A DNA stretch of 64,000 nucleotides from Anthoceros angustus (GCA_010909165.1 VJWM01000025.1:1488001-1552000); one strand, 5' to 3'. Numbered from the stretch's first letter, positions 31,594 through 34,863 are shown. The notes: a model not told the origin generated them from the sequence alone. Program-made: numbers and translations.

Positions 31594-34500
31594 TCATTCG
31601 ATTGGGGAGCTCGAGGCGTCCGAGTCCCAGTGAAGCCAGAGGGTTTGCAACTCGTTCCGGACCTCCTTCATTTCGGGACGATCTCGGGATCTGGGGGCCA
31701 AGCACCTGACAGCCAAAGCGGCCACACTGGCTATCGATGCCCTCCCATTCGCTGAACAGTGCGTGTCCGCCAACACAGGGTCGATCAGTTCTTGCCACTC
31801 CCCCCTGTCCATGGCAGACAGTGCCAGGGTCACCAAGCTAGTCGATTCATAGCCTCTCCCAAAATCGATAGCAGACTTTGAGGAGATGAGTTCCAGTAGC
31901 ACAACGCCGAAGCTGTACACATCGCTCCTGGGAGTCAGCTGGAAGCTGGAAAAATACTCTGGATCAATGTAGCCCGGGGTGCCTTGGATCGCCAGTGTGG
32001 AAACATGAGTAGCTGTCATGCTGGGAGCTAGCTTGAGATGCCGAAATCTGCCACCTTGGCATTCAAGTCGTCGTCCAGGAGAATGTTGCAAGACTTGATG
32101 TCTCGGTGGAAGATGGGAGGTCGGCAGCCGAATGAAGATAGGCCAGGGCATCGGCAGTCTGTAGCGCTATGAGAAGGCGTTGCCTCCAGCTGAGGGAGAG
32201 AATCCTTGTCTGGTCCCTTCCAGATGTTCCTTGAGTGTGCCGTTGGGGACAAACTCGAAGACGAGGAGAGCAATTTTGTTCTCCATGGAACAACCCAGCA
32301 GCTTCACCAAGTGTCTGTGACTCACTCCCGACAGAATCCTGACCTCATTGAGGAACTGGTACTTGTACTGGGGGGAGCCTTCACGCTTGCCCTTCTTGAT
32401 GGCTACCGCTGTGCCATCGGCGAGCTTGCCACGGTACACTGTGCCGAAGCCGCCGGCTCCGATCTGGGCCGAGTCCGAGAAGTTGGAGGTGGCTTTGCGG
32501 AGTTCCCCAAGGGGCATCACCGTCACCGTTTGCCTCTCTAGCAGCGTGGCAATCAAGTCCGCATCTTGCTGGTGCTTTTTGGAATACACTCTCCATCTCC
32601 AGAGGGAGAACAAACAACTGGCCGCGCAAACCAATACAGCGGAAACCACTATTGCCACAAGCACCCACACGTTGATACCATGGCCAGCAGGCGCAGCAGG
32701 TTGATGCCTGCAGGGCGGAAGAGGTTCGCCGCAGAGGCCCGGATTGTCGGCGAAGAAGCTGGCGTGACTGAGATCCGGACGCAGGCCACCTGGGATGGGT
32801 CCTGAGAGATTGTTGCCGGACAGATTGATGGTTCTCAGGTTAGGCAATGCAAAGAAAAGCTTACCAGGTATTTCTCCTGACAGATTGTTGTGGCTAAGGT
32901 CCAAGACTTGCAGAGTGAGAGGAAAGCTGTCTGGAATGGGGCCGGACAGCTTGCTGTGGGAGGCGTTGAAGTGCAGCAAGCTCGGCAGACCTGTGAAAAG
33001 CTCAGCCGGCATCGTTCCCTCCAAATTGGTGTTGCTCAGATCCAACACGCCGAGAGTGACGGGTAACCTTCCGGGAATGGGGCCAGATAATCTGTTGTTG
33101 GACACGTTGAGGAAGGTCAAATTGGGCATGGAACGACTGAAAAGCTGGTCCGGCACTGTTCCGCTCAAGTTGCAAGATGCAAGATCCAAGATCTGGAAGG
33201 AGTCCAGACTCGTTGGCATGGCACAATTGAGGCTGTCCGGCAATGGTATGCCCATGAGATCGCTACCGGCTAGACGAAGTTCCTCCAGCGGGGGGGTAGG
33301 AGGATTACGAAGCTCGGAACAACTTCTGTCCAGCATACTCTGCAAGGGATTGGGGAACTTCTTGGAAGGTGTCATGTTGAAATCGTTGTGGCTCAAGTCC
33401 CAAACTGGCCCAACCAGGAGGAAGTCATCGATCGAGAGCAAGTTGGTGAGGTCCCCAGTGAATCGGTTGCCTTGCACTTGGATTGTGGTCCTCCGAAAAT
33501 CCAGGCTGGCGAGAACTTTGATGAAGTCACCTGACAGTTGGTTGTTTTTAAGCCACAGAACGTCGAACCCAAAATTGGCCCAGGCGGCGGAGGAAGGAAG
33601 AGAGCCATTCAGCTGATTGTCACTCAGATCCAGGGTAGATAACCAATATATGTCTTCACTGCTGCTGTCGGAGGGAGGGTCGGGTATGCTGCCAACCAGA
33701 GAATTGCTGGAGAGATTCAAATAAGACAGCTTTACACTATATAGCAAAGTGGCAGGAATGCTGCCATTCAGCTCATTTCCAGACAGATCCACCCATCCAA
33801 CCCCTCCCGCCGCGAAATCCGGAGGGATGGGGCCAGACAAGTTGTTGTGGGACAGGTCCACGTGCGGCAGGATTGGAACAAGGACGGGATGGGGCCTTGC
33901 AGATCGTTCCATGACAGGTCCAACACCTGAAGACTGGGAATAAATCCGGTAACTGTCCCCCAATTTGGTTCCGGGAAAGGTTCACCCGTTGCAGAGCAGA
34001 ATGAATCTGGAAGAAGGAACTGGTGAAGTTTGTGAAGCTGTTTTGGGCTGCATCCAGGAATTGCAGACTTGGGGCAGAGGGCACCTCCCGCTCAGATTGT
34101 TGCTGGTGAGAGAGACATGGGTGAGGCGTGTTAGCCCTTCCAAATTGGGGACGCTTCCGTTCAAGAAGTTATCAGACAGATCCAGGCTCACGAGGTTGGC
34201 GAGACTGCTCAATTCCTCAGGGATGCTTCCAGGCAGTCCACTGTCAGCAACAGACAAAAACTGCAGCTCCCACAGCCCAACCAAGCTGTGGAGAACTTCC
34301 GTCACAGACCCATACCCGGGTGGCCAGCCCCTGTCCGCATAGAGGTAACGGAGGTTGCGACCTACGCTGGGAAAGTACCCGTACGCCCAACTTCCGGAAA
34401 TGTCCAGCCATGTCAGCCCAGTCACGAATGGAAGATTATAAGACAACTCGGACCACGTATCGGGATTGGACGACAGGTCCAACTCTCGGAGGCTCCCCAG

Positions 34501-34863
34501 ACCACTCAACTGGTCGAGTAAGGTTCTAATCGACAGGGAGCAAGCGGAGAAGTCGAGCCTGAGCACAGCGGACTCCGAATCACACAGCACCCGAATCCAA
34601 CCACACGGCGTATCGTCGCTAGCGTTCCAGCTCCCGAGGTCTTCCTGGCACTCCCCCAGATTCCCCTGGTTTTCTTTCTTAAAATTCAGCAGGAGCTGTC
34701 CATCGCGGGAGAGCTCAGCACCGACGTTGCTTCCGAATCGGCATAGGAGCAAACTGCACATCATGAGTGCCACGCATATCCCCAAGCTAAGGCTCGCACC
34801 ACCCCCGCCAAAACTGCGATCCACAAGCCGCCCTACCCTAACCTGCAGTGCAGAGGCCTTCAT
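31594..34863 (-). CDS. Intronless LRR receptor-like kinase, copy 1 (~22-23 LRRs, TM, WAK/WAKL-type RD kinase); 4 frame breaks in this sequence
   Basis: Signal/N-cap ([17 protein letters not shown]), plant LRRs LxxLDLSxNxLSGxIP, C-cap [34 protein letters not shown], kinase [41 protein letters not shown]. Breaks at ~34087, ~33945, ~32205 and ~32037. Confidence 0.9.

What the first reader, a model, noticed from the sequence alone, without database searches (positions are those of the whole stretch)
31594..34863. LRR ectodomain fused to a WAK/WAKL-type kinase in an intronless gene
Seen: ~22-23 LRRs with an island-like interruption ([17 protein letters not shown]), then a TM and a kinase containing [65 protein letters not shown] and AIDFGR. 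Established: these motifs are typical of WAK/WAKL (WAKL14/15/20-like) kinases, which normally carry GUB-WAK/EGF ectodomains, not LRRs. Inference: a domain-shuffled, lineage-specific receptor class. This is my best candidate for an undescribed system in the window.
Basis: partly seen in the sequence, partly recalled or inferred. Interest (0 to 1): 0.8.

Follow-up and report, generated by a model that had tools for sequence, protein, structure and literature searches.

The report
Broken liverwort LRR receptor-kinase copy
This is a frame-broken copy of a receptor-kinase family, already annotated in liverwort genomes, that joins a leucine-rich-repeat sensor to a wall-associated-kinase-type kinase; the domain pairing is real, but it is not new and not intact here.

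Summary
The minus strand of 31594-34863 carries signal peptide, LRRNT, about 24 LRRs, a TM helix and an RD kinase. It is not one ORF. Family proteins align only with six frame shifts (~34086, 33940, ~33868, ~32193, 32118, 32034), plus a 2-nt loss at 31603.

Three more copies in the window (44309-47847, 59501-60609, 62201-64000) are broken worse. None has a stop codon after frame correction.

The kinase reading holds. In two trees the window copies fall in a well-supported clade of liverwort LRR-kinases. That clade is sister to angiosperm WAK, then LRK10L, and lies far from LRR-IX/X/XI/XII kinases.

The architecture is not unannotated. Marchantia's MpRLK-Pelle_WAK_LRK10L-6 and proteins of Riccia and Calypogeia have it, and the Riccia gene is an intact single exon. 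I found no paper describing the class.

Best reading: a decaying paralogue at the edge of a tandem array. Contigs from the same species lack four of the six breaks, so some assembly error is not excluded.

The scan had already noted the same pairing on other DNA of this genome (s1-253518, s1-286050, s1-253360).

The parts
31594..34863 (-). Copy 1: the whole LRR-TM-kinase locus, collinear with 1015-aa Riccia fluitans R1flu_000293 but frame-broken
   Evidence: tblastn
34720..34863 (-). Start codon and N-terminal 48 residues with a hydrophobic signal-peptide-like core
   Evidence: Translation; read from the sequence, no predictor run
34579..34710 (-). LRRNT_2 cap
   Evidence: Pfam PF08263, E 4e-7
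34098..34578 (-). LRR 1-7, frame 0
   Evidence: manual repeat parse
34084..34097 (-). Frame break a (one base missing). Shared with copies 2 and 3. X1 contigs carry an extra C behind 34086; X2 contigs do not
33941..34097 (-). LRR 8-9, readable only in frame 2
   Evidence: (LRR_1)
33939..33941 (-). Frame break b: 13-nt deletion relative to copy 2. An X2 contig with no substitutions against copy 1 appears, by gap arithmetic, to carry the 13 nt
33869..33939 (-). LRR 10, readable only in frame 1
33856..33886 (-). Frame break c (one base missing). Shared with copy 2, and present in an X1 contig that matches 33746-33940 exactly
32710..33870 (-). LRR 11-24 and the Cys-pair C-terminal cap, frame 0, intact
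33289..33405 (-). Predicted helix at 33307-33348. The PDP motif is conserved in the family
32599..32676 (-). Transmembrane helix followed by basic residues (RWRVYSKKH)
   Evidence: (helix at model residues 401-432)
32206..32598 (-). Juxtamembrane segment and kinase N-lobe (GxGxxG, VAIK, the QFLNEV motif), frame 0
   Evidence: Pfam kinase E 1.5e-16
32193..32205 (-). Frame break d. Unique to copy 1. An extra G behind 32193 is seen in X1 contigs and in copies 2 and 4, but not in X2 contigs
32116..32195 (-). Kinase subdomain V-VIa (the LSWRQRL...AYLH stretch), readable only in frame 2
32118..32119 (-). Frame break e. Unique to copy 1. All X1 and X2 contigs laid here carry an extra G, so the assembled state is unsupported
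32033..32115 (-). Catalytic loop (HRD, RD type) and DFG, readable only in frame 1
   Evidence: Pfam E 8e-7
32034..32035 (-). Frame break f. Shared with the fragment copy at 59.5-60.6 kb. The extra G is in X1 and in a minority of X2 depth
31597..32032 (-). Activation segment and kinase C-lobe, frame 0. A 2-nt loss at 31603 alters the C-terminal tail
44309..47847 (-). Copy 2: 93.5% identical paralogue with about 15 frame breaks. Its kinase core (44762-45272) is in one frame
59501..60609 (-). Fragment copy (TM and kinase only), about 16 frame breaks
62201..64000 (-). Copy 3 (ectodomain to N-lobe). Runs off the window end. About 14 frame breaks and a 19-nt insertion

Best explanation
The locus is a decaying, non-coding paralogue of a liverwort receptor-kinase family. 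In that family a plant-type LRR ectodomain (LRRNT cap, about 24 repeats, one conserved irregular repeat with a helix, Cys-pair cap) is joined through one TM helix to an RD kinase of the WAK/LRK10L clade.

By analogy with other LRR receptor kinases, intact members would bind an extracellular ligand on the LRR solenoid and signal by kinase activation. The hypervariable LRR patches and the tandem arrangement point to a recognition (immune-type) repertoire. That functional step is inferred, not shown.

The copy in this window cannot make that protein as assembled. Translation from the ATG at 34863 stops after LRR 7 at 33982-33984. I read this as the eroding edge of the array. It may still supply sequence by gene conversion.
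For: Architecture: Pfam on the separate pieces and collinear alignment to R1flu_000293.

Family and kinase class:
- The top hits are liverwort LRR-kinases at 62-75% identity in the N-lobe. They include MpRLK-Pelle_WAK_LRK10L-6. Next come angiosperm WAKs at about 57%.
- In the trees the liverwort clade has SH-aLRT support of 98-99. It is sister to WAK (89-90), then LRK10L (92-95), then CrRLK1L/LRR-I/LRR-VIII (96). LRR-IX, Xb, XI and XII kinases lie outside.
- Against solved structures BRI1 scores 169 bits, versus 230 for SYMRK and 224 for FERONIA.

Broken state:
- Six shifts are needed by each of seven guide proteins.
- Break b is a 13-nt deletion.
- Break c lies inside an X1 contig that matches the window exactly.
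- Lesions are shared between copies in a mosaic. They include indels of 4, 6, 7 and 19 nt, which are not typical read errors.
- All four copies are broken.
- The neighbouring desaturase (325 profile positions across one intron) and POT (249 positions) genes show no break.
- X2 contigs reproduce copy 2's deletions at 31800, 32370, 32511 and 33801, and copy 1's state at breaks a and d.

Recognition-type evolution: substitutions between copies 1 and 2 cluster at 33200-33600 and 34200-34700. There Ka/Ks is about 1.2-1.3, against 0.2 in the kinase.
Against: - After frame correction none of the four copies has a stop codon. About 6 would be expected from the 190 copy 1 / copy 2 substitutions, at 3.1% per substitution.
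- Kinase Ka/Ks is 0.2, from only 9 synonymous and 6 non-synonymous changes.
- In the kinase the ratio of indels to substitutions is about 11:16. My recollection is that neutral ratios are much lower. This is the signature expected of 1-2-nt assembly errors in poorly polished repeats.
- X1 contigs from the same species carry the missing base at breaks a, d, e and f and the missing GG at 31603.
- No contig in either run supports the assembled state at break e.
- Whether X1 is RNA or DNA, and whether X2 is independent of the assembly, is unknown.
Confidence: 0.6

Rival explanations
1. The gene is intact in the organism and is a working member of the family. The frame breaks are residual 1-2-nt assembly errors in a repeated region that polishing could not reach.
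For: - X1 contigs match copy 1's hypervariable ectodomain exactly over about 1 kb, yet carry +C at 34086, +G at 32034, 32118 and 32193, and +GG at 31603.
- There are zero stop codons in four frame-corrected copies.
- Kinase Ka/Ks is 0.2.
- There is an excess of short indels in G/C runs.
- X2 contigs differ from X1 contigs of the same sample by extra 1-nt deletions, which suggests a noisy data type like the one behind the assembly.
Against: - Break c lies inside an exact X1 contig, and break b is a 13-nt deletion.
- The runs at a, d, e and f are only 1-3 bases long, not long homopolymers.
- In the kinase, X1's contig differs from copy 1 by 12 substitutions in 526 nt and mostly follows copy 2. 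It is probably another paralogue or a merged graph path.
- Unique genes nearby are clean.
- The other copies also carry 4-19-nt indels and truncations.
Confidence: 0.25
2. The locus is no longer a receptor kinase but still has a use. One possibility is a truncated, secreted LRR protein made from the N-terminal ORF (34863 to the stop at 33982). Another is a silent donor of ectodomain sequence to the neighbouring array by gene conversion.
For: - The N-terminal frame is open for 293 codons with a signal-peptide-like start and LRRNT.
- Ks between copies is a mosaic (0.02 to 0.13), and lesions are shared in patches. Both are typical of conversion tracts.
- X1 contigs cover the locus.
Against: No evidence that X1 is RNA. 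No conversion tract into an intact gene was examined. The ORF ends in out-of-frame residues with no cap or anchor.
Confidence: 0.1
3. The kinase belongs to a standard LRR-RLK subfamily, and the WAK-like motifs are superficial.
For: The ectodomain resembles LRR-XI/XII kinases and LRR-RLPs at 28-34% identity.
Against: LRR-IX, Xb, XI and XII kinases, and the two bryophyte LRR-RLKs with the most similar ectodomains, fall far outside the clade. Hit ranking and the Marchantia name agree with the trees.
Confidence: 0.03

Closest known systems
Liverwort LRR-kinases annotated as RLK-Pelle_WAK_LRK10L (Marchantia polymorpha MpRLK-Pelle_WAK_LRK10L-6; Riccia fluitans R1flu_000293; Calypogeia fissa models)
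   Same: - Same domain order and length (about 965-1050 aa).
- Same kinase clade (support 98-99).
- Same irregular PDP-motif repeat.
- The Riccia gene is a single 3048-nt exon.
   Different: - The window copy is frame-broken.
- It is only 70-75% identical in the N-lobe and 36-41% in the ectodomain, so it is a species-specific paralogue group.
- The Marchantia AXG93 model spans 3544 nt for 1026 aa, so it has intron(s).
Angiosperm WAK/WAKL receptor kinases (GUB_WAK plus EGF ectodomain)
   Same: Sister kinase clade.
   Different: The ectodomain is wholly different. No GUB_WAK, EGF_CA or WAK_assoc hit; only LRRNT_2 and LRRs.
LRK10L receptor kinases
   Same: Next-closest kinase clade (support 92-95) and part of the same iTAK family name.
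   Different: Different ectodomain, and the kinase sits outside the liverwort-plus-WAK pair.
LRR-RLK subfamilies XI/XII and LRR-RLPs (MIK1/2, Xa21, EIX, Cf-9 types)
   Same: Plant-specific 24-residue LRR solenoid with LRRNT and Cys-pair caps. Hypervariable repeats in tandem arrays, as in immune receptors.
   Different: The kinases are phylogenetically distant. Ectodomain identity is only 28-34%, so no donor can be named.

Membership tests
RLK/Pelle WAK-LRK10L kinase clade | Kinase-domain phylogeny places the protein with WAK and LRK10L kinases | tested here: met
   Two maximum-likelihood trees. Liverwort clade plus WAK has support 89-90. Adding LRK10L gives 92-95. The next branch out has 96. 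Sampling was limited to search hits; Arabidopsis WAKL14/15/20 were not included.
RLK/Pelle WAK-LRK10L kinase clade | Assignment by the iTAK / Lehti-Shiu kinase HMMs | not testable with these tools
   The HMM library is not available here. The only indirect evidence is the source's name for the Marchantia clade member, MpRLK-Pelle_WAK_LRK10L-6.
Canonical WAK/WAKL receptors | GUB_WAK_bind and/or EGF-like ectodomain | tested here: not met
   A Pfam scan of all pieces finds only LRRNT_2 and LRR families outside the kinase.
Standard LRR-RLK subfamilies (LRR-IX/X/XI/XII) | The kinase groups with that subfamily | tested here: not met
   TMK, EMS1, MIK1/PXL2 and Xa21/MIK2-like kinases lie outside the 96-supported group that holds the clade. 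BRI1 and BAK1 score lower than SYMRK and FERONIA.
Liverwort LRR-WAK_LRK10L receptor family | LRRNT, about 24 LRRs with the PDP-motif irregular repeat, TM and kinase, collinear with family members | tested here: met
Liverwort LRR-WAK_LRK10L receptor family | Uninterrupted reading frame, that is, a functional member | tested here: not met
   Six frame breaks and a C-terminal 2-nt loss in the assembled sequence. Four of the breaks are absent from contigs of one sequencing run, so the true state is partly open.
Active (RD) protein kinase | GxGxxG, VAIK lysine, HRD, DFG and the activation-segment motifs are present | tested here: met
   All are present in the frame-corrected reading, but they are spread over three frames.

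The most novel reading that the evidence does not exclude
The frame breaks are largely assembly errors. Copy 1 would then be a live, transcribed member of a liverwort-specific receptor class that no paper has yet described. That class puts fast-diversifying LRR ectodomains on a WAK-clade kinase, forming a recognition repertoire built independently of the LRR-XII and RLP receptors of seed plants.
Probability: 0.2. Interest if true: 0.5.

Novelty: new member of a known kind. Interest (0 to 1): 0.3.

Why it matters
For this locus, little: it is one eroded copy among several.

For the family, the point is modest but real. Liverworts carry dozens of receptor kinases that put a plant-type LRR sensor on a WAK/LRK10L-clade kinase. 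Here they sit in tandem arrays with hypervariable LRR patches. If these act as pattern-recognition receptors, it would show that the 'LRR sensor in a rapidly diversifying array' solution arose on a different kinase chassis in liverworts than in seed plants. Marchantia offers a tractable system for testing this.

The practical lesson for the scan is that motif-by-motif reading across frames can hide pseudogenes. A second lesson is that this genome's repeated regions carry many short indels whose origin should be checked against raw reads.

Tried and rejected
- Ectodomain donor search with the intact 408-residue LRR stretch. It returned only generic 28-34% matches to RLPs and LRR-XI/XII kinases. 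Family members did not even rank at the top, so no donor lineage can be named.
- ESM Atlas look-up of the Marchantia member. It gave only 'Streptophyta' LRR-kinase clusters and no finer taxon range.
- Exact look-up of P0009's gene. Not on record, so P0001 and P0010 were used instead.
- Seven literature searches and four papers read. None describes LRR ectodomains on WAK-clade kinases in liverworts. Lehti-Shiu 2009 could not be fetched.
- Tiny introns at the break points. Rejected, because the coding alignment is contiguous to the base and the shifts are 1, 2 or 13 nt.
- X1's kinase contig being simply copy 2. Rejected, because it differs from copy 2 at 6 of the 22 sites checked and lacks copy 2's own deletions.
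- The large HMMER search and a second structure job were not used, because no claim here rests on the absence of relatives.
- The frame-corrected, joined translation (X at every break) was used only inside local scripts for the alignment guide and the trees. All database searches used the separate in-frame pieces by reference.
- One script call was empty by mistake.

Full report
**What is at the coordinates**

On the minus strand an ATG at 34863 opens a frame that encodes a hydrophobic signal-peptide-like start, an LRRNT_2 cap and leucine-rich repeats. The last sense codon before the stop is at 31597-31599. Pfam, run on each in-frame piece separately, finds:
- LRRNT_2 (E 4e-7);
- LRR_1 (E 1e-29 on the largest piece);
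- the protein kinase domain split over three pieces: N-lobe E 1.5e-16, catalytic loop E 8e-7, C-lobe E 5e-7.

I parse about 24 repeats. A TM helix lies at 32599-32676 and is followed by basic residues.

**It is not one open reading frame**

The three-frame translation shows the N-terminal frame ending at a stop at 33982-33984. The next LRRs are readable only in frame 2, then frame 1, then frame 0 again. The same 0, 2, 1, 0 walk recurs inside the kinase.

I wrote a frameshift-aware protein-to-DNA alignment. With the Riccia fluitans protein as guide it needs:
- shifts at ~34097, ~33939 and ~33868 in the LRRs;
- shifts at ~32205/32195, ~32115 and ~32032 in the kinase.

Six further family proteins demand the same three LRR shifts. 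No intron-sized gap exists. The locus is intronless only in the sense that the coding DNA is collinear.

**More copies in the window**

Self-comparison finds a 93.5% identical copy at 44309-47847 on the same strand. There are also partial copies at 59501-60609 and 62201-64000. All are broken, with about 15, 16 and 14 frame shifts respectively.

Breaks d, e and f in copy 1 are single-G losses relative to copy 2. Break b is a 13-nt deletion. Breaks a and c are shared with copy 2. Lesions are shared between copies in a patchwork. They include indels of 4, 6, 7 and 19 nt.

**What the family is**

A search with the juxtamembrane and N-lobe part of the intact 604-residue piece returned liverwort proteins first, from Riccia fluitans, R. 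sorocarpa, Calypogeia fissa and Marchantia polymorpha. They are 62-75% identical, mostly 940-1050 aa, and carry LRRNT_2, LRR and kinase Pfam domains. One is named by its source MpRLK-Pelle_WAK_LRK10L-6. The next hits were angiosperm WAKs at about 57%. After those came LRR-VIII, CrRLK1L and CRK proteins.

A kinase-domain tree placed both window copies in a clade of these liverwort proteins with SH-aLRT support of 98. That clade is sister to the WAK clade (89), and the pair is sister to LRK10L (95). I then added LRR-IX, Xb, XI, XII and VIII kinases, plus the two bryophyte LRR-RLKs whose ectodomains most resemble this one. The result stayed the same, and those kinases fell far outside.

Against solved structures the family kinase scores 230 bits to SYMRK and 224 to FERONIA. 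It scores only 183 to BAK1 and 169 to BRI1.

The ectodomain has no GUB_WAK or EGF domain. Its nearest non-family matches are generic, at 28-34% identity to RLPs and LRR-XI/XII kinases. No donor can be named.

**Family hallmarks**

Its core (DLS.N, then a PDP motif, then a variable stretch) is conserved in Riccia, Marchantia and Calypogeia members. An AlphaFold2 model of the intact LRR stretch, built with a 17-sequence family alignment, has mean pLDDT 88 and pTM 0.80. It shows a regular solenoid with a 14-residue helix at that spot and a long TM helix at the end.

The Riccia gene is a single 3048-nt exon that translates exactly to the 1015-aa protein. A Marchantia model spans 3544 nt for 1026 aa, so it has intron(s).

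**Are the breaks real?**

For real decay:
- Break b is 13 nt.
- Break c lies inside a contig of run X1 that matches 33746-33940 without any difference.
- The other copies carry larger indels and truncations, and they share lesions.
- The window's stearoyl-ACP desaturase (325 profile positions over two exons) and POT transporter (249 positions) show no break.
- Run X2 reproduces copy 2's deletions at four sites and copy 1's state at breaks a and d.

For assembly error:
- X1 contigs carry the missing base at a, d, e and f and the missing GG at 31603. No contig supports the assembled state at e.
- After frame correction none of the four copies has a stop codon, although 3.1% of random substitutions would create one. 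About six are expected between copies 1 and 2 alone.
- Kinase Ka/Ks is 0.2, though this rests on only 9 synonymous and 6 non-synonymous changes.
- Short indels are almost as frequent as substitutions in the kinase.

X1's kinase contig differs from copy 1 by 12 substitutions in 526 nt, mostly toward copy 2. It is most likely another paralogue or a merged graph path. I cannot tell whether X1 is RNA.

My reading is that copy 1 is truly disabled, at least at b and c. Some of the 1-nt losses may be technical on top of that. I put about 0.6 on a pseudogene and about 0.25 on an intact gene.

**Evolutionary pattern**

Substitutions between copies 1 and 2 are concentrated at 33200-33600 and 34200-34700, with up to 21 per 100 nt. 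There Ka/Ks is about 1.2-1.3. The TM and kinase are nearly identical. Ks itself varies from 0.02 to 0.13 along the gene, a mosaic that suggests exchange among array members.

It also agrees with an earlier follow-up on a 28-kb array starting about 10 kb beyond this window. I did not re-examine that array.

**Known or new**

The architecture is present and named in public liverwort proteomes, so it is not an undescribed system at annotation level. Seven full-text searches and four papers, including two large RLK surveys, gave no discussion of LRR ectodomains on WAK-clade kinases in liverworts. The class therefore appears unstudied rather than unknown.

The scan itself had already flagged the same pairing at two other places in this genome. 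It had also flagged WAK-type kinases with phytocyanin ectodomains.

I file the locus as a new, degenerate member of a known kind, with interest 0.3.

**Limits**

- The trees use only sequences returned by the searches. Arabidopsis WAKL14/15/20 were not among them.
- The taxon range beyond liverworts was not established.
- The species is not identified. No annotated protein of it is in the protein database, and the run names are coded.

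Noticed in passing
window 16777-17481, 23614-25046, 26109-26678 (+) and 43292-43846 (-): Pieces of an Spt5 transcription-elongation-factor gene (NGN, KOW1, KOW2, KOW5) occur at four places. One lies just downstream of receptor copy 2. The region has therefore undergone segmental duplication that carried gene fragments along.
   Followed up: partly
window 11462-12737 (+): A stearoyl-ACP desaturase (FA_desaturase_2) gene. Profile positions 1-143 and 144-325 lie in two ORFs about 100 nt apart, consistent with one intron and no frame break. 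I used it as an internal control for assembly quality.
   Followed up: partly
window 31560-32800 compared with 44470-45705, 59440-60650 and 62150-62650: Across four paralogous copies there are roughly 50 frame-shifting indels but no stop codon after frame correction. In the kinase, indels are nearly as common as substitutions. This is an odd imbalance for ordinary pseudogenes. It is worth checking against raw reads genome-wide in repeated regions.
   Followed up: partly
window 32184 joined to 33028: Contigs of both sequencing runs X1 and X2 contain a low-depth junction that skips 843 nt and inserts 17 other letters. This points to a further rearranged copy of the gene somewhere in the organism.
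   Followed up: no
window 34955 and 47847: The similarity between copies 1 and 2 ends about 90 nt upstream of the start codon. An X1 contig also departs from the window at 34955. This could be the edge of the duplication unit, a paralogue's divergent promoter, or a splice site of a 5' UTR intron.
   Followed up: no
window 62201-64000: Copy 3 runs off the window end. It may be the first unit of the larger tandem array that earlier notes place beyond the window. It carries a 19-nt insertion in the N-lobe and ends its kinase homology at about 62150.
   Followed up: partly
locus L002 (Marchantia polymorpha LVLJ01001475.1) 10001-13544: The Marchantia family member's gene model is about 460 nt longer than its coding length, so it has intron(s). 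The Riccia fluitans member is a single exon. Intron content therefore varies within the family.
   Followed up: no
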